Below, in pieces: positions 17,470 to 36,983 of a stretch of 64,000 nt of DNA. The stretch is taken from NCBI RefSeq assembly GCF_000143415.4, contig NW_003314304.1:814667-878666 (forward strand), in the 5' to 3' direction. The translations under genes were made by a program, and so were the position numbers. The notes under the pieces were generated by a model that saw only the letters and a program-made list of their open reading frames with translations, was not told the DNA's origin and did not search any database. Source of the DNA: Selaginella moellendorffii (lineage: Eukaryota; Plantae; Lycopodiophyta). Positions within the stretch are counted from its first letter, which is position 1, and each line of letters opens with the position of its first letter.

Positions 17470-17860
17470 CAAGAAGTAACTGACCAGGATTTGGCGGATT
17501 CGAGCCGACTCCCCGAGCAAAGGGCTAGGAACAGAATCCTAAGTCAACTCAAGACCCTTCGCGACAAGATCAAATGATTCTTCAACACGTTGCAGGATCT
17601 CTGTAGGTTGCAAGTCAAGCTCCATGTTACCCGCTTCAATTTTGCTGCAATAGAACGAGAGCAACCAAGCTCAGCATGACGTGAATTTAGATCCGCTTCT
17701 TACCTGTAATCAAGGATAACATTGATAATCCCCAGCAATACCTCTCCACTGCTGCGAGTAGTAGAAGCATACTCGCCTTGCTCATCCGTTATGTCCGTTT
17801 CAGCGTCCATGCCAATCACGGCATTCATTGGAGTACGAATTTCATGCGACATGTGAGCAA
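17470..17860 (-). pseudogene. Hybrid histidine kinase HisKA-region fragment
   Basis: H-box [47 protein letters not shown]; deletions and stops. Confidence 0.85.
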
Positions 17861-18583
17861 TCTTTGGAAGCCAAGTACCAGATATAAGTTGTGTGAAATA
17901 CTTTAGTACCAGGAATTTTCGATGAAGAGGACCCTGTCGCGCTTGGGTGAGGAGAGCGCTGGATTGGGAGGAGCGTCCACAATCCTCCGGATCTCTCAGG
18001 CTGGCAACTGGTACGAACTGCAAAAGAACGCATAAAAAACTAGTAGTTAAAGTAGAAACAGATTCTCACCTTTTAGAGCTGATCCTCAGAAGGAAGCGTG
18101 GACTTCGTCTCCGGTTTTTTCCACTCTCCATTCTTTCTTCGCTAATCAAGAAGGTAGCAAATCAACCTCCTGCGAGAAAAACAAAGTTACGTTGTAATAT
18201 TTGCACTGCTCGAAAAAACTTATCGCAATTTATCGGTGAGTGGAATAAGTGACCTCGCCAGAAGAAAAGCACTGGTCCAGCACATTGTCCAGCCCCTTCA
18301 TACTTTCGTCTCGGGTAAATCAGTCGGCAACGATCGTAGCTACTGTGCTTTCTTGAGTCCGGGCACTGTCTGGTGAGACAAGCAGCTTCCTCGCTCTTCT
18401 GCAAGCAAATCAATGAGAAAAACCAGAACCTTCTTGAAGTCAAAATTTTCTTGTCTCGTATTTTATCGCCGTCAATCACATGCTCTTTGCAAGCAGCATT
18501 GCTTGCATTCCCAAAAAGATCTTGTTCCTAATCAAAAGAACTCAAGATGGAGAAACACGTCAAAGGAAATACTTACACTGAAA

Positions 18584-19575
18584 CTAGAGATCAAGTGTTC
18601 TAGTCAAGTCAAACTTGAAACTAGAGCTGATCATCATGGTAGAATTGGGATGATAATTCTGCATATCACTTAGAATGGCCCCGTAGGTTGTAGCACCTTC
18701 TTGTATGTAGTGCGTCATATTGCTCGTGAACCAGCCCCTCTGATTGACTTCGTCCTAAAAGAAAACTTCACAAGATTAGTAAATGTGGAACTTTCTCTGC
18801 ACTTACAAAATATGATAACTCAGAGTCTAAGCATGCAGAAATTGAGACCACGCTCGTTCTGAAAAACACTCCGGCTTGTAATATCTCTGGCGGCGTCTGG
18901 GACGATGCGTTAAACCATCCAGATCCAGTGTTTCCATATGGAAGATCAAGCACAGTCCCGCTGTGACAGGAATCGAATATGGCAGTCAGATGGACTCCTC
19001 CATGGAGATACTGGACCATGACGTTATGAAGTATGTCATCTACCGAGTACTGTAACAAAGACAGAAAATGAAATTGTAAACAGCGATGAAATCAACAAAC
19101 CCCCGTCGTTGAAGCATAAAGCCTCGTCGTTTCCATCCAGCTCGTCCAAGTTTTTGTCGGGGAATTGAGTCCCGTGTCCACAAAAGTAAAACAACAATCT
19201 TTCGCCAGCGCTAGCAGCCGCAGCAAAATCTAGTATAGCGGTCAAAGCTTGGATCACTTCTGGGCCTGAAAAAACAAACACTTACAACAAAATCTCAAAT
19301 AATCACATTACCATACTCTTGAATATTGTGGTTTTATACTTCCGACCGATCAGGTTTAATATGTCCTCTAAATCCTTCAAGCATCCTATCCCACCGTCGT
19401 CAACCGTTAGAAGTAAAGCGTTCATAGACGTTGACAATATCGTAGGATCTACCACGGAGCTCGTACATGTCTTGCAACTGAAGGAATTTTCGAGCGACAC
19501 AAAGTGCCCTTCAGCTTGTGACAAAAGCACAAGAAGGACGATAACTCCTGCACCTGTAAACAGCAAAAATCTCAT
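18584..19575 (-). CDS. Metacaspase (peptidase C14) with hydrophobic N-terminal leader and no Zn-finger prodomain
   Basis: LLFYFCGHG (catalytic His), [29 protein letters not shown] (catalytic Cys), p10 [11 protein letters not shown] and end [14 protein letters not shown]. Introns 19316-19266 and 18806-18755. The middle intron needs the TAG acceptor near 19040 or a 1-nt indel in a G5 run. Confidence 0.85.
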
Positions 19576-19607
19576 AACATTCAATCATCATAAGACATAA
19601 TACAGAC

Positions 19608-20640
19608 CTTTGCCTTGCCATAAGGACTCGGACAGTAGGAAGAGAGACTCCCATATCCGCCGGTTGAAAAGAATCTGGCTGGTGTTCGCGAGGGGAGATA
19701 ATCCGGGAAGGCCGCAGATGTTCTTCTTCTTGGGATCAACAACCTGCCATTGAAAATTTAGAGCTCCTGGATAGAACAAGAGAATGGCTTTTACCTGGAC
19801 GACGACCACGGCAATGGCGCCCAGGAACAAGAAGAACAATATGCATCTACCGGTAGCAAGCTGCAAAACAGGATCCTCCACCAGTGTATCCCGGAAGAAA
19901 AGAATGCCAACTTGTCATTTGAGCGTCGATCGGACCTTTTTTACGCGCTCAATCTTCTGATCCGTCTCGTCCATAGTTTTCTTCCCAGCGTCCATGAGTT
20001 GCTGGTTTGACATTGCTACAAAAACGAAGAGCAAAGAGCTTAGAGAATCAAGTGAGACAAGTGGCGACTTACTGGACACCATCTTTACGTTTGGATCCGT
20101 GAGGTCAGTGCGAGCACCTTCGCCACCTTCCGTCAATTCCGCCTTTTTGTTCTCCAGCGAGCTCGTGTACCTGTGGAAAAGAGAGAAGCACTTGTGAGAC
20201 ACCGGCATGGCGAAGGAATGCACACACAAGAACTCACGTTTTGCGCAGGGCCACATACGAGTTGAGCTCCTTGATCTGCAAGAGACACCATCGTAGCGCT
20301 CGCAAAATCTCCTGGCCTGGAACTTACCAGTGACTGCTTCTTTTCATTCAGCTGCTTCGTCAAATCCGGTGGGTTCATCGACTCCTCCTCCTTGATCTCC
20401 CTAAACTCCTTCATGAGCCTGCATTGAAACTTTAGCGTCTCTAGCTAGCACAGCCAGGAGGGAGCGAGACCGACCTCTTGCACTCACGTATCTTGGCAGT
20501 GAGCTCCTCCAGATGCTTGCTCTGCCGGGCAGGCTCCTTGATCTTGTCCATCTTCTGGAAGCCAGACCTGCATTTGGCCAGTGAGAATTTCTAGATATCT
20601 AGTGCGAGGGCGACTTACGATTGATCCTTGAGCTGGCCAC
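19608..20640 (-). pseudogene. NPSN copy 2: in frame from exon 2 through TM and tail, lacks the SNARE-core exons and a complete exon 1
   Basis: SGFQKMDKIKEPARQSKHLEELTAKIRECKR..IERVKK|LATGRCILFFLFLGAIAVVVVQ|VVDPKKKNICGLPGLSP. Confidence 0.85.
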
Positions 20641-20644
20641 CTAC

Positions 20645-21511
20645 ATCTACCTTGACGACAATCACGGCAATGACAATGAGGACAGGAAGAACAGTATGCA
20701 TCTATCGCTAGCACGCTGCAAAACAGAGAAAGAAAAGAATGCCAACTTGTCATTTGAGCGTCGACCGGACCTTTTTTACGCGCTCAATCCTCTCATCCGT
20801 CTCGTCCATGGTTTTCTTACCAGCGTCCATGGGTTGCTGGTTTGACATTGCTACAAAAACGAAGAGCAAAGATCTTAGAGAATCAAGCGAGGCAAGTTGC
20901 GACTTACTGGACGCCATCTTTACTTTTGGACCCATGAGGTCGGTGCGAGCACCTTCGGCACTGCCACCTTCCATCATCTCTGCCTTTTTGTTCCCCAGAG
21001 AGCTCGTGTACCTGGGTGAAACCAAGGAAAAAAGGGAAGAACTTGTGCGACACGGCGTAGGAATGCACACACAAGAACTCACGTTTTGTGCAGGGCCACA
21101 TACGAGTCGAGCGCCTTGATCTGCAAGAGGCGATGAGATCGATCGCTCGCAAAATCTCCTGGCCTGGAGCTTACCAGTGACTGCTTCTTTTCATTCAGCT
21201 GCTTCGCTGGGTTCTTCGACTCCTCCTTGATCTGTCTATCAAACTCCTTCATGAGCCTGCATTGACCCTTTAGCGTCTCTAGCTAGCACAGCCAGGAGGC
21301 AGCGAGACCGACCTCTTGCACTGGCGCAGCTCCTCCAGATCCTTGCTCTGCCGGCCAGGCTCCTTGATCTTGTCCATCTTGGATCTGCATTTTGGCAGTG
21401 AGAATTTCTAGAGAATTTCTAGAGCGAAGCGAGCATGGCGACTGACGAGAGAGCCCGGAAGAGATTCTTGTGGCCATCTAGATCTGCGATCGTCGGGCTG
21501 AGCTCGGCCAT
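20645..21511 (-). pseudogene. NPSN copy 3 (frameshifted), head-to-tail with copy 2
   Basis: Same exon series starting at MAELSPTIADL, with deletions in exons 2 and 3 and a frameshift in the TM exon. Confidence 0.85.
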
Positions 21512-22078: not shown

Positions 22079-23146
22079 ATGGCGATGGCGGCAGCGGGGG
22101 CGGCGATGGTATTCTTGGTGCTTGTCGCGGCGCAGGCGTGCGGCCGTGATTACTGCTCTCTCCGCCAGGCGCGCGGCTGCGGGAACAGCACGGTTGAGGT
22201 AGAGCACGCTATGAGCGCGCACAAGTGCTTCATAGCCGACACGGTTGTAGCTGCCACGCTCACAGATGTGCGCCGCCTCCCCAACTCGTATCTCATCCTT
22301 TTGGAGATGCCGGGCGTGACGAGCAGCAGCGATGTCAAGGTGGAGGTCTCGGGCTCTCAGTTCCATCGAGTCGTCTCCATCGTTGGGATCTCTCACGAGG
22401 CAAAAGAGCGTCGCATCCTCAAGGATCGGGGCGCCTTCACCAAGATGTTTGCGCGAGAGTTTGTGCTCCCCGATGCAGTGGACGCGGAAAGGATAAGCTA
22501 CCAGCTTCACAGTGGTCTCTTGCGGGTGACGCTGCCGCTTGTCCCAGGGCTGGAGCAAACAGGGCGAGAGCAGCGAGAACAGCGAGTTGTGGAGGAGGAG
22601 GAGTACCTTGCGGTGCCTGCCGCGCGTGTTCCTCCGGCCTCGTGCACCATTTCAGACGCGGCCGGGCTCATTCGGCCGGAAGCTCTCGCCTCCAACGACG
22701 CAGAGGATTGTGGTGACGACTCAAGCGTCGTCACCATCTCCCCATTGGTGGACATCTTGGATCGTCCAGGCTCGTACGTGGTCGTCGCGGAGATGCCAGG
22801 CGCGCAGTCGGCCACCGTGGACATCGCTTGGGTGGAGGACAAGTCCGGCTTTGTGCTCGAGATCACTGGCGTTGCTCGAGACGAAGATGATGGCGGAGAA
22901 GCGGTGAGAGTAGAGCGGGGCGGAGCGAGCACCAAAGTGTTTGCTCGCAGGCTTTACTTCCCCCGCGGTGTCGTGCAGGATGTGGCAACATATCACCTCA
23001 GTGATGGGCTTCTCAAGGTGATGCTACCCAAACATGTTCCAAGCCTCGGGCAAAGGATAGCGGGCCTATGGAATAAAGCGTTGAAGCATTTCATATGCCA
23101 AGGTGTTCAGTTTGGGAGGATGAGGGCCAAGTATTGTTTCAGGTAA
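22079..23146 (+). CDS. Small heat-shock (HSP20) protein with signal peptide and two alpha-crystallin domains
   Basis: Intronless 355 aa; leader MVFLVLVAAQACG. ACD1: DVRRLPNSYLILLEMPG..FAREFVLPDAVDAERISYQLHSGLLRVTLP. ACD2: VDILDRPGSYVVVAEMPG..FARRLYFP..LSDGLLKVMLPK. TATATAA lies ~40 nt upstream. Confidence 0.85.
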   Translation: MAMAAAGAAMVFLVLVAAQACGRDYCSLRQARGCGNSTVEVEHAMSAHKCFIADTVVAATLTDVRRLPNSYLILLEMPGVTSSSDVKVEVSGSQFHRVVSIVGISHEAKERRILKDRGAFTKMFAREFVLPDAVDAERISYQLHSGLLRVTLPLVPGLEQTGREQREQRVVEEEEYLAVPAARVPPASCTISDAAGLIRPEALASNDAEDCGDDSSVVTISPLVDILDRPGSYVVVAEMPGAQSATVDIAWVEDKSGFVLEITGVARDEDDGGEAVRVERGGASTKVFARRLYFPRGVVQDVATYHLSDGLLKVMLPKHVPSLGQRIAGLWNKALKHFICQGVQFGRMRAKYCFR

Positions 23147-34111: not shown

Positions 34112-35173
34112 ATGGCGATGGCGGCAGCGAGGGCGGCGATGGCATTCTTGGTGCTTGTCGCGGCGCAGGCGTGCGGCCGTGATTACTGCTCTCTCCGTCA
34201 GGCGCGCGGCTGCGGCAACAGCACGGTTGAGGTAGAGCACGCTATGAGCGCGCACAAGTGCTTCATAGCCGACACGGTTGTAGCTGCCACGCTCACAGAT
34301 GTGCGCCGTCTCCCCAACTCGTATCTCATCCTTTTGGAGATGCCGGGCGTGGCGAGCAGCAGCGATGTCAAGGTGGAGGTCTCGGGCTCTCAATTCCATC
34401 GAGTCGTGTCTATCGTTGGGATCTCTCACGAGGCGAAAGAGCGTCGCATCCTCAGGGATCGTGGTGCCTTCACCAAGATGTTTGCGCGAGAGTTTGTGCT
34501 CCCCGATGCAGTGGACGCGGAAAGGATAAGCTACCAGCTTCACAGTGGTCTGTTGCGGATGACGCTGCCGCTTGTCCCAGGGCTGGAGCAAACAGGGCGA
34601 GAGCAGCGAGAACAAGTTGTGGAGGAGGAGTACCTTGCGGTGGCTGCCGCGCGTGTTCCTCCGGCCTCGTGCACCATTTCAGACGCGGCCGGGCTCATTC
34701 GGCCTGAAGCTCTCGCCTCCAACGACGCAGATGATTGTGGTGGCGACTCAAGCGTCGTCACCATCTCCCCATTGGTGGACATCGTGGATCGTCCAGGCTC
34801 GTACGTGGTCGTCGCGGAGATGCCAGGCGCGCAGTCGGCCACCGTGGACATCGCTTGGGTGGAGGACAAGTCGGGGTTTGTGCTCGAGATCACTGGCGTT
34901 GCTCGAGATGAAGATGATGGCGGAGAAGCGGTGAGAGTAGAGCGGGGCGGAGCGAGCACCAAAGTGTTTGCTCGCAGGCTTTACTTCCCCCGCGGTGTCG
35001 TGGAGGATGTGGCAACATATCACCTCAGTGATGGGCTTCTCAAGGTGACGCTACCCAAACATGTTCCAAGCCTCGGGCAAAGGATAGCGGGCCTATGGAA
35101 TAAAGCGTTAAAGCATTTCATATGCCAAGGTGTTCAGTTTGGGAGGATGAGGGCGAAGTATTGTTTCAGGTAA
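34112..35173 (+). CDS. Second intact copy of the signal-peptide double-ACD sHSP
   Basis: 353 aa, near-identical to 22079-23146; TATATAA upstream. Confidence 0.85.
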   Translation: MAMAAARAAMAFLVLVAAQACGRDYCSLRQARGCGNSTVEVEHAMSAHKCFIADTVVAATLTDVRRLPNSYLILLEMPGVASSSDVKVEVSGSQFHRVVSIVGISHEAKERRILRDRGAFTKMFAREFVLPDAVDAERISYQLHSGLLRMTLPLVPGLEQTGREQREQVVEEEYLAVAAARVPPASCTISDAAGLIRPEALASNDADDCGGDSSVVTISPLVDIVDRPGSYVVVAEMPGAQSATVDIAWVEDKSGFVLEITGVARDEDDGGEAVRVERGGASTKVFARRLYFPRGVVEDVATYHLSDGLLKVTLPKHVPSLGQRIAGLWNKALKHFICQGVQFGRMRAKYCFR

Positions 35174-36422: not shown

Positions 36423-36983
36423 TTAACTACTTAATTTCCGTGAAATAATATACTCCTCCTCCACAACTTGTTCTCGCTGCTCTTGCTGCTCCAGCCCTGG
36501 GACAAGCGGAAGAGTCACCCGCAAGAGACCACTATGAAGCTGGTAGCTTATCCTCTCCGCGTCCACTGCATCGGGGAGCACAAACTCTCGCGCAAACATC
36601 TTGGTGAAGGCACCACGATCCCTGAGGATGCGACGCTCTTTCGCCTCGTGAGAGATCCCAACGATGGACACGACTCGATGGAATTGAGAGCCCGAGACCG
36701 CCACCTTGACATCGCTGCTGCTCGTCACGCCCGGCATCTCCAAAAGGATGAGATACGAGTTGGGGAGGCGGCGCACATCTGTGAGCGTGGCAGCTACAAC
36801 CGTGTCGGCTATGAAGCACTTGTGCGCGCTCATAGCGTGCTTGACCTCAACAGTGCCGTTCCCGCAGCCGCGCGCCTGGCGGAGAGAGCAGTAATCACGT
36901 CCGCATGCCTGCGTCACGACAAGCACCAAGAATACTATCGCCGCCCTCGCTGCCGCCCGTTTACCCATTGCCATCCCTTCCAT
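36423..36983 (-). CDS. Truncated single-ACD sHSP copy (open 186 aa ORF)
   Basis: Signal peptide and ACD1 up to VVEEEY, then a new tail IISRKLSS*. Confidence 0.6.
   Translation of the reverse strand: MEGMAMGKRAAARAAIVFLVLVVTQACGRDYCSLRQARGCGNGTVEVKHAMSAHKCFIADTVVAATLTDVRRLPNSYLILLEMPGVTSSSDVKVAVSGSQFHRVVSIVGISHEAKERRILRDRGAFTKMFAREFVLPDAVDAERISYQLHSGLLRVTLPLVPGLEQQEQREQVVEEEYIISRKLSS

What the first reader, a model, noticed from the sequence alone, without database searches (positions are those of the whole stretch)
18584..19575. Metacaspase with a signal/anchor-like leader and a fungal-like catalytic motif
Seen: intact His-Cys dyad (CGHG, DSCH), very short p20-p10 linker, no LSD1-type Zn-finger or Pro-rich prodomain, and an N-terminus [14 protein letters not shown]|H followed by CKTC. 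Known: plant type I and II metacaspases generally lack signal peptides. Plant type I typically reads KLH(A/S)I(I/V)DACHSG, while yeast Mca1 reads [19 protein letters not shown], close to this [18 protein letters not shown]. Inference: a secretory-pathway or apoplastic metacaspase of unusual, possibly horizontally acquired, origin.
Basis: partly seen in the sequence, partly recalled or inferred. Interest (0 to 1): 0.8.

Follow-up and report, generated by a model that had tools for sequence, protein, structure and literature searches.

The report
Divergent, probably decaying Selaginella metacaspase
This is a real but very divergent metacaspase (caspase-like protease) gene of the spikemoss Selaginella moellendorffii; it shows no sign of coming from a fungus, and it carries likely disabling lesions in both haplotypes, so it is probably a dying gene copy rather than a new secreted protease.

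Summary
A 4-exon, 275-aa minus-strand reading (19575-18584) has His117 in CGHG, Cys166 in DSCHSG, a short p20-p10 linker, no Zn-finger or Pro-rich prodomain, and a signal-peptide-like start.

- **Organism:** Selaginella moellendorffii.
- **Relatives:** The only close relatives among ~15 billion proteins are the other haplotype's allele (EFJ07021) and one paralogue (XP_024521621, "metacaspase-1-like").
- **Origin:** A fungal origin is not supported. The Cys motif is fungal-typical, but the p10 motif (SAC.D) and the linker length are plant-type-I-typical. Plant and fungal profiles score alike. The pair lies outside core fungi, and AU tests reject neither affinity.
- **Intron 2:** The paralogue and the other haplotype place it in phase 0 (DG|YL.DD). 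The window's extra G (G5 against G4) then shifts the frame, unless a cryptic acceptor 10 nt downstream is used. RNA did not cover this junction.
- **Other haplotype:** It lacks the ATG and has a 122-nt deletion in exon 1.
- **Constraint and expression:** Allelic changes are 10 nonsynonymous to 3 synonymous, and expression is near zero.
- **Leader:** Its ATG lies inside a candidate 55-nt intron, so the secretory reading is unproven.

The scan noted this same stretch twice in this genome and not on other DNA.

The parts
19317..19575 (-). It holds ATG 19575-19573, a 23-aa signal-peptide-like leader (19575-19507), FSCKTC, the first beta-strand (NALLLTV) and the S1-pocket motif GCLKD (19386-19372).
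   Evidence: The 3' end (donor at 19316) is confirmed by an X1 spliced contig. The 5' end and the start codon are not confirmed by RNA.
19266..19316 (-). Intron 1, 51 nt, GT..AG, phase 1.
   Evidence: Joint 19264/19316 in an X1 contig at depth 9. The paralogue P0004 has an intron at the same position and phase.
19101..19265 (-). Exon 2. It holds the catalytic His117 (19176-19174, in FCGHG) and the acidic Ca-site-like run DELDGNDE (19146-19123).
   Evidence: Pfam C14 E = 0.014 on this exon alone.
19100..19104 (-). G5 run at the exon 2 donor. The other haplotype has G4. The extra G moves the donor from phase 0 to phase 1.
   Evidence: Pairwise alignment of the window with L001. The paralogue's conserved phase-0 intron is 'KDG|YLLDD'. 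P0001 reads 'NDGYLVDD'.
19040..19100 (-). Intron 2 as needed to keep the frame in this haplotype (61 nt, cryptic acceptor 19040|19039). The conserved acceptor is 19050|19049. Using it with G5 gives a stop after 5 codons.
   Evidence: No read or contig covers this junction.
18807..19039 (-). Exon 3. It holds the catalytic Cys166 (18968-18966, in [13 protein letters not shown]), the short linker and the p10 motif SACLD (18839-18825).
18755..18806 (-). Intron 3, 52 nt, GT..AG, phase 0.
   Evidence: Joint 18753/18806 in an X1 contig and one X9 read. The paralogue has an intron at the same position and phase. Populus type I has a phase-0 intron 2 residues away.
18584..18754 (-). Exon 4. It holds the rest of the p10-like region and the stop codon (18586-18584).
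   Evidence: It is 100% identical between the two haplotypes.
19328..19449 (-). The 122 nt of exon 1 that are deleted in the other haplotype (GL377690.1). The deletion is out of frame and removes the first strand and GCLKD.
   Evidence: The X1 transcript contig carries this stretch, so it comes from a window-type allele.
19553..19607 (-). Candidate 55-nt GT..AG intron that contains ATG 19575. If spliced, it joins the upstream open frame (19881-19608) in frame to GAGVIVLL...
   Evidence: Sequence. The annotated fused model P0001 uses it. Binned depth of 0.45 (42 nt) in bin 19510-19603 of X10 and X11 fits one read each that stops at the acceptor. This is an inference only; no joint was listed.

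Best explanation
**What it is.** This is a nuclear, intron-bearing gene of Selaginella moellendorffii for a very divergent, prodomain-less, type-I-like metacaspase (peptidase family C14, p20 + short linker + p10). It is one of only two such loci found. The other is XP_024521621 on another scaffold. Both loci lie next to a signal-peptide double-alpha-crystallin sHSP gene, which points to a segmental duplication.

**Origin.** It most likely descends from plant type I metacaspases by fast divergence, not by transfer from a fungus or bacterium.

- It keeps what a Ca2+-dependent, Arg/Lys-directed cysteine protease needs: His117, Cys166, GC..D and D-S-C for the S1 pocket, the acidic D-x-D-G-x-D-E run, DD, and LDLP.
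- It would enter the ER through a cleavable leader.

**State in the sequenced plant.** The copy is probably being lost.
- This haplotype has one extra G on the conserved phase-0 donor. That gives a frameshift, or loss of three conserved residues through a cryptic acceptor.
- The other haplotype lacks the start codon and has a 122-nt out-of-frame deletion.
- Substitutions between the haplotypes look neutral.
- Transcripts are very rare.

**Shown versus inferred.** Shown: family, fold (on the paralogue), gene structure of introns 1 and 3, the haplotype lesions, and the absence of close relatives. Inferred: vertical origin, loss of function, protease specificity, and any targeting.
For: - **Species and relatives:** searches give the species and accessions. 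The exhaustive search with exon 3 found only P0001 (99% identity) and P0004 (55%) as close hits. Word searches with P0004 and P0001:186-400 found nothing closer than about 90-95 bits.
- **Family and fold:** Pfam C14 is above cut-off. The best PDB sequence hits are Yca1, C. glabrata MCA-I and TbMCA2. The AlphaFold model of the paralogue has pLDDT above 90 over the core, and its top Foldseek hits are 7QP0 and 4F6O.
- **Plant-like traits:** SAC.D occurs in 106/107 plant and 1/109 fungal proteins. The spacing is 39, against medians of 37 and 77. The plant HMM scores 87 bits and the fungal HMM 81 bits.
- **Introns:** the two Selaginella genes share three intron positions and phases. Two of these lie at or near Populus type I introns of the same phase.
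- **Trees:** the pair has 100/99 support and lies outside core fungi. pair+plants is not rejected.
- **Decay:** G5 against G4, the lost ATG and the 122-nt deletion are shown. The conserved DG|Y phase-0 intron is shown. Allelic changes are 10 nonsynonymous to 3 synonymous. Depth is at most 1-2, against 50-150 on the neighbouring gene.
- **Duplication:** the neighbouring sHSP at the paralogous locus is 47% identical to the window's.
Against: - The frame is otherwise open over 275 codons, with every catalytic and pocket residue kept.
- Introns 1 and 3 are correctly spliced in window-type transcripts.
- A cryptic AG 10 nt downstream restores the frame exactly.
- G5 could be a consensus error in a low-coverage haplotype. 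A search for runs holding the G5 words listed none, which is uninformative.
- The count of 13 allelic substitutions is small.
- No non-angiosperm plant type I sequences were in the trees. The pair sits on a long branch, and in two trees it joins a fast-evolving basidiomycete paralogue (P0089; 99/88 and 96/83).
- pair+fungi is also not rejected (p 0.38).
Confidence: 0.55

Rival explanations
1. It is a working secretory-pathway or apoplastic metacaspase. ATG 19575 is used and the 23-aa leader is a cleavable signal peptide. Intron 2 is spliced in frame, either through the cryptic acceptor or because G5 is an assembly error. The lumenal protease then acts on secreted substrates, perhaps together with the neighbouring secreted sHSPs.
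For: - The leader has the canonical n/h/c layout, with small residues at -3 and -1 (A-E-G|H).
- There are three N-x-S/T sequons, and the one at P-N-S-T-M is shared with the paralogue.
- The paralogue also has a hydrophobic helix ahead of the domain.
- Both loci lie beside signal-peptide sHSP genes.
- The catalytic and pocket residues are intact.
- Window-type spliced transcripts exist.
Against: - ATG 19575 sits in a pyrimidine-rich ...TTTACAG| acceptor context, inside a canonical 55-nt GT..AG candidate intron. It is absent from the other haplotype and is preceded by several upstream ATGs.
- Binned depths in X10 and X11 fit splicing of that intron.
- The cryptic-acceptor product lacks the conserved Y-L/S-V before DD.
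- Expression is near zero in three deep runs.
- No signal-peptide predictor was available here.
Confidence: 0.22
2. The metacaspase is the C-terminal part of a longer protein. Upstream exons, either the SNARE-like gene or its open tail at 19881-19608, are spliced to the acceptor at 19554|19553. The hydrophobic stretch is then an internal, second membrane segment, and the protease domain is membrane-tethered rather than secreted.
For: - The upstream frame stays open from the SNARE-like TM exon to 19588.
- A 55-nt GT..AG intron would join it in frame.
- The GenBank model EFJ07021 is built this way.
- The depth pattern in X10 and X11 fits that splice.
- The paralogue is annotated with 74 residues ahead of its hydrophobic exon.
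Against: - No joint between the two genes was listed in any run. Depth falls from 50-150 on the SNARE-like exons to about 1.
- EFJ07021 also swallows the downstream HisKA fragment, which is typical of an over-fused ab initio model.
- The paralogous locus has no SNARE-like sequence upstream.
- The upstream tail has no Pfam match.
Confidence: 0.1
3. The family entered the Selaginella lineage by horizontal transfer from a fungus (or a bacterium) and later gained introns.
For: - The [13 protein letters not shown] motif is the fungal norm.
- The best word-search hits after Selaginella are all fungal.
- In two trees the pair joins a divergent basidiomycete paralogue, P0089.
- Exon 2 alone matches bacterial GSU0716 best in PDB.
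- No plant orthologue was found outside S. moellendorffii.
- pair+fungi is not rejected.
Against: - The pair is excluded from the core fungal clade (100/97).
- With the fast basidiomycete rows removed, it branches beside plants at the eukaryotic base. pair+plants then costs only 0.8 lnL.
- The P0089 join is flagged as long branches meeting, and P0089 shares none of the pair's indels.
- The p10 motif and linker length are plant-type.
- The paralogue's Cys motif is plant-like (NACHSGTALDLPF).
- Intron positions are shared or near-shared with Populus.
- Bacterial proteins are only 28-39% identical over about 70 residues and form the outgroup.
- The flanking genes are ordinary plant genes.
Confidence: 0.07

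Closest known systems
XP_024521621.1 'metacaspase-1-like', Selaginella moellendorffii (P0004; scaffold GL377694.1)
   Same: It is the only true close relative: 40-41% identity over about 215 columns, with a 100/99 clade. It shares FCGHG, the 4-residue-shorter loop before DD...NTGSGW after LDLP, SACLD, PNSTM, three intron positions and phases, a hydrophobic segment ahead of the domain, and an sHSP neighbour.
   Different: It has 399 aa and 12 exons. Its hydrophobic stretch is internal, after 74 residues built from tandemly repeated mini-exons. It has Asn instead of Asp two residues before the catalytic Cys (NACHSG). It has an intact phase-0 DG|Y splice.
Plant type I metacaspases (AtMC1-3 class; here 120 angiosperm proteins, e.g. 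Populus POPTR_017G052600, P0345)
   Same: They share the p20 + short linker + p10 layout, the SAC.D p10 motif, the Cys-to-p10 spacing, a similar profile score, and phase-1 and phase-0 introns at or near the same places.
   Different: The window gene has no LSD1-type Zn finger or Pro-rich prodomain. It reads DSCHSG..LDLPY rather than the usual DACHSG..LDL(E/x)H. It has Cys in place of Ser in S-G-H-G and a shorter loop before DD. It sits on a very long branch and is not recovered inside the angiosperm clade.
Fungal type I metacaspases (yeast Yca1/Mca1, PDB 4F6O; Candida glabrata MCA-I, 7QP0)
   Same: They are the best solved-structure matches by sequence and fold, and have a near-identical motif around the catalytic Cys.
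   Different: Fungal proteins have a Q/N/P-rich prodomain, a linker about 40 residues longer, and S-G-S or S-G-C rather than S-A-C in p10. The pair lies outside the fungal clade.
Bacterial caspase homologues (GSU0716, PDB 3BIJ; Acidobacteriota, Bacteroidota and Nitrospirota proteins, L002-L059)
   Same: They have a similar domain size and share the short 'DE..C..DG' loop seen in exon 2.
   Different: They are only 28-39% identical over the core, form the outgroup in all trees, and are mostly 600-860-aa multidomain proteins.

Membership tests
Peptidase family C14 (caspase/metacaspase fold) | Match to the Pfam Peptidase_C14 profile above the curated cut-off | tested here: met
   The allelic model P0001 scores 43.3 bits and the paralogue P0004 38 bits, against a cut-off of 21.4. 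Single window exons are only weak (E = 0.014 and 0.24). The spliced window protein could not be handed to the Pfam tool. It scores 242 bits over the full length of an in-session C14 HMM.
Peptidase family C14 (caspase/metacaspase fold) | Catalytic His-Cys dyad in the G-H-G and C-H-S-G contexts | tested here: met
   His117 is in FCGHG and Cys166 is in DSCHSG. These columns are invariant in alignment A3.
Peptidase family C14 (caspase/metacaspase fold) | Caspase-hemoglobinase fold | tested here: met
   This was tested on the paralogue only. In the AlphaFold2 model the core has pLDDT above 90. The Foldseek top hits are metacaspases 7QP0, 4F6O, 9N3E and 4AFR, at E = 1e-15 to 1e-12.
Type I metacaspase | p20 and p10 joined by a short linker (no long type II linker, no p10-p20 swap of type III) | tested here: met
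   There are 39 residues from the Cys motif to SAC.D. The plant type I median is 37. The order is p20 then p10.
Type I metacaspase | N-terminal prodomain (Pro/Gln-rich, and in plants an LSD1-type Zn finger) | tested here: not met
   Only about 45 residues precede the first strand. They form a hydrophobic leader plus FSCKTC, with no CxxC..CxxC finger and no Pro-rich run. The prodomain is common but not universal among proteins called type I.
Type I metacaspase | Acidic S1 pocket and Ca2+-site residues. As recalled from the TbMCA2 work of McLuskey et al. 2012, these are Cys/Asp in GC.ND, Ser in SGHG, Asp before the catalytic Cys, the D-rich loop, DD, and D in LDLP. | tested here: inconclusive
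   By alignment, [18 protein letters not shown] and LDLP are present. Ser is replaced by Cys (FCGHG). The p10 D.QTSAD motif is degenerate (DSELSYFD). The residue roles are recalled from the literature and were not verified here. No activity data exist.
Type I metacaspase | Placement inside a recognised type I clade | tested here: inconclusive
   The pair lies outside both the angiosperm type I and the core fungal clades on a long branch. AU tests reject neither. No bryophyte, lycophyte or algal type I sequences were sampled.
Secreted protein with a cleavable signal peptide | N-terminal n/h/c regions at the true translation start | tested here: inconclusive
   The pattern is present by eye. The start codon is unverified. 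It lies in a candidate intron and is missing in the other haplotype. No signal-peptide predictor was available.
Horizontally transferred gene | Nested within a donor clade with support, against the species tree | tested here: not met
   It is not nested in core fungi (100/97) or in bacteria (100/95).

The most novel reading that the evidence does not exclude
Selaginella has a small lineage-specific family of prodomain-less metacaspases that work inside the secretory pathway or apoplast, targeted by a signal peptide or signal anchor. The genes are paired in the genome with secreted double-alpha-crystallin sHSPs. The window copy would be a still-functional, low-expressed allele, with G5 being either an error or bypassed by the cryptic acceptor.
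Probability: 0.18. Interest if true: 0.65.

Novelty: new member of a known kind. Interest (0 to 1): 0.3.

Why it matters
No metacaspase of land plants is known to carry a signal peptide, so a truly lumenal or apoplastic one would open a new compartment for this protease family. The evidence instead points to a fast-evolving, species-restricted paralogue that is being lost.

That outcome is useful in three ways:
- It is a caution against inferring transfer from a 13-residue motif.
- It flags a chimeric database model: EFJ07021 fuses a SNARE-like gene, this gene and a HisKA fragment.
- It is a small example of haplotype-specific gene decay in Selaginella.

The intact paralogue XP_024521621 is the better target for testing the secretory idea.

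Tried and rejected
- **Handing in the spliced protein:** the 275-aa protein has no reference. It went only to local scripts, and exon pieces went to the other tools.
- **Pfam on single exons:** only weak hits. Exons 1 and 4 gave nothing in Pfam or PDB.
- **The search for related loci with the wide alignment A1:** no stretch was conserved enough. The narrower A2 worked.
- **LSD1 Zn-finger scan:** none were found in the first 268 proteins fetched. This is why plant type I had to be fetched through P0023.
- **Daucus locus look-up:** not on record.
- **Search for runs holding the G5 words:** none listed, so uninformative.
- **Bacterial-type promoter and terminator scan:** irrelevant for a plant gene.
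- **Literature searches:** nothing on Selaginella or signal-peptide metacaspases in the held library.
- **The quick tree's free search:** it missed a better tree by 26 lnL, so only the careful trees are used.
- **Joining of the pair with P0089 (Meripilus):** rejected as probable long-branch attraction. The tool flags it, there are no shared indels, and P0089 has an insertion where the pair has a deletion.
- **One X9 read ending exactly at 19039:** considered as evidence for the cryptic acceptor. Rejected because the read is fully laid (150 nt), so its end carries no information.

Full report
**What is there.**
- On the minus strand, four exons give an 828-nt frame of 275 codons: 19575-19317, 19265-19101, 19039-18807 and 18754-18584. 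The GT..AG introns are 51, 61 and 52 nt.
- The protein starts with a signal-peptide-like leader (M-R, 16 hydrophobic residues, S-Q-A-E-G|H), followed by FSCKTC.
- A caspase-type domain follows, with His117 in FCGHG and Cys166 in [14 protein letters not shown] 39-residue linker leads to a p10-like part that begins ISACLD.
- There is no Zn finger and no Pro-rich prodomain.

**Organism and context.**
- The window carries ordinary plant nuclear genes: plastid EF-Tu with a transit peptide, an mTERF protein, UDP-apiose/xylose synthase and an O-fucosyltransferase.
- The exhaustive protein search with exon 3 found a 99% identical 678-aa protein, P0001. This is EFJ07021.1 (SELMODRAFT_430194) of Selaginella moellendorffii on scaffold GL377690.1.
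- That scaffold is 97.7-99.2% identical to the window over the locus. It is the other haplotype of the same gene, or a second allele.

**Relatives.**
- Apart from that allele, the only close relative in the 1.84-billion-representative library is P0004. P0004 is XP_024521621.1, "metacaspase-1-like", also from S. moellendorffii but on another scaffold.
- Two word searches, covering lengths of 118-698 aa, found no further plant relative. The next hits score about 90-95 bits and are fungal or unnamed.
- P0004 shares idiosyncrasies with the window protein: FCGHG, a loop four residues shorter before DD, NTGSGW after LDLP, SACLD and PNSTM.
- The two genes share three intron positions with the same phases.
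- Both loci lie next to a signal-peptide, double-alpha-crystallin sHSP gene; the two sHSPs are 47% identical. The two loci therefore look like the product of a segmental duplication.

**Family and fold.**
- Pfam Peptidase_C14 is above the cut-off on P0001 and P0004.
- The best solved structures by sequence are the type I metacaspases Yca1 (4F6O) and C. glabrata MCA-I (7QP0), then TbMCA2. The Arabidopsis type II enzymes are far weaker.
- An AlphaFold2 model of P0004:70-399 has pLDDT above 90 across the core. It finds the same metacaspases first.
- By alignment, the window protein keeps the GC..D, D-x-C, acidic-loop, DD and LDLP positions. These form the basic-residue S1 pocket and the Ca2+ site in TbMCA2; the residue roles are recalled from McLuskey et al. 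2012 and were not tested here.
- Ser is replaced by Cys before G-H-G, and the p10 D.QTSAD motif is degenerate.

**Is it fungal-like or transferred?**
- The Cys motif is indeed the fungal norm (112/113 DSCHSG). It is a minority form in the 112 angiosperm type I proteins fetched (14 DSCHSG, 96 DACHSG).
- The paralogue reads NACHSGTALDLPF.
- The p10 motif S-A-C-x-D occurs in 106/107 plant and 1/109 fungal proteins. The Cys-to-p10 spacing (39 and 38) matches plants (median 37), not fungi (median 77).
- The plant and fungal domain profiles score the window protein at 87 and 81 bits. They score the paralogue at 94 and 106 bits.
- In careful ML trees (LG+C20+F+G4), the two Selaginella proteins form a 100/99 clade on a long branch. 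That clade lies outside the angiosperm type I clade (100/100), outside core fungi (99/99 to 100/97) and far from bacteria.
- In two trees the pair joins a fast-evolving basidiomycete paralogue (P0089, Meripilus). The tool flags this as long branches meeting, and there are no shared indels.
- Without those fast rows, the pair branches next to plants at the base of the eukaryotes. Forcing pair+plants then costs 0.8 lnL.
- AU tests do not reject pair+plants (p 0.85, 0.29 and 0.24) or pair+fungi (p 0.38).
- Two of the shared introns lie at or near Populus type I introns of the same phase. One falls within an indel and the other is two residues away.
- Bacterial homologues are 28-39% identical over the core.
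- Taken together, nothing requires a transfer. The weight of small characters favours a fast-diverged plant type I derivative. No bryophyte, lycophyte or algal type I sequences could be fetched, which is the main gap.

**Is the gene intact?**
- The paralogue has a phase-0 intron exactly at KDG|YLLDD.
- The other haplotype has G4 where the window has G5 (19104-19100). Its model reads NDG|YLVDD through acceptor 19050|19049.
- With G5 the donor is in phase 1, and the conserved acceptor gives a stop after five codons.
- Only the AG at 19041-19040 restores the frame, at the price of the conserved Y-x-V before DD.
- No read or contig covers this junction, and a search for runs holding the G5 words listed none.
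- The other haplotype is clearly broken. The ATG is replaced (ATC AAA...), and 122 nt of exon 1 (window 19449-19328) are deleted, out of frame. The deletion removes the first strand and GC..D.
- Between the haplotypes there are 10 nonsynonymous and 3 synonymous changes in 228 codons, roughly the neutral ratio.
- In three deep stranded RNA-seq runs the gene has depth of at most 1-2, while the upstream SNARE-like gene has 50-150. One older run yields window-type spliced contigs for introns 1 and 3 at depth 2-9.
- I therefore read this locus as a copy under relaxed constraint that is being lost. I leave about one chance in four that the window allele still works.

**The leader.**
- ATG 19575 lies in ...TTGCTGTTTACAG|GT, which is an acceptor context.
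- A canonical donor (CAAAG|GTCTGT) at 19608|19607 defines a 55-nt candidate intron, the usual size here. Splicing it would remove the ATG and join the upstream open frame (19881-19608) in frame.
- EFJ07021 is built that way, but it also swallows the downstream HisKA fragment, so it is an over-fused model.
- No joint was listed there; the threshold is three reads.
- The depth of 0.45 (42 nt) in bin 19510-19603 of both X10 and X11 is what one read stopping at the acceptor would give in each run. This is an inference from binned depth, not a finding.
- The paralogue has its hydrophobic stretch on a separate mini-exon after 74 annotated residues. That stretch is predicted as a helix.
- So a hydrophobic segment ahead of the domain is a family trait. 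Whether it is a cleaved signal peptide, a signal anchor or an internal segment is open.

**Verdict.**
- Horizontal origin is not supported.
- The secretory reading is unproven.
- The scan noted this stretch twice in this genome (s1-368755 and s1-368829), and not on other DNA.

Noticed in passing
window 19588-20640 (minus strand): This is a well-expressed SNARE-like gene (depth 50-150), with introns at 20015-20073, 20168-20236 and 20275-20328. Its reading frame stays open past the TM exon (19860-19795) to 19588, which is 13 nt before the metacaspase ATG. GenBank EFJ07021 fuses it with the metacaspase and a HisKA fragment. No read joint between the genes was listed.
   Followed up: partly
window 17700-18030 (minus strand); P0001 residues 487-544: A histidine-kinase HisKA fragment ([13 protein letters not shown]) lies just downstream of the metacaspase. 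Pfam HisKA scores 45 bits on the fused model. It is probably a separate gene or a gene remnant.
   Followed up: no
window 22079-23146, 34112-35173 and 36423-36983; L060 5746-6921; L001 1283-3392: Signal-peptide, Cys-containing double-alpha-crystallin sHSP genes lie beside both metacaspase-like loci. The L060 protein is 47% identical to the window's (E = 1e-93). The gene pair seems to have been duplicated together.
   Followed up: partly
window 18500-18980 against L001: The two haplotypes are 100% identical over about 480 nt (the 3' half of the gene and its flank) but differ by 2-3% just upstream. This could be a gene-conversion or recombination boundary.
   Followed up: no
window 20730-20849 and 19895-20014: A 120-nt piece of the SNARE-like gene is duplicated about 830 nt upstream (95.8% to L001 4564-4683). 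Reads that 'go back 778' (20850 to 20073) probably reflect this repeat.
   Followed up: no
L060 3380-3660: The 5' part of the paralogue is made of tandemly repeated mini-exon plus intron units. The exons start GAGAA and end GGTGCAAG, and the introns are similar. One of these mini-exons encodes the hydrophobic stretch.
   Followed up: no
P0005, P0007-P0011, P0018, P0024 (dinoflagellate, euglenid and MMETSP proteins): Many protist proteins carry two or three complete C14 domains in tandem. Each domain scores 230-270 bits on the in-session HMM.
   Followed up: no
window 19726-20507, runs X9-X11: These RNA-seq runs carry the same species label as the window. They differ from the window at many fixed positions (for example 20358 and 20377) and are heterozygous at others, so they come from another genotype. 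Depth drops near 19936-19955 are probably mapping losses.
   Followed up: no
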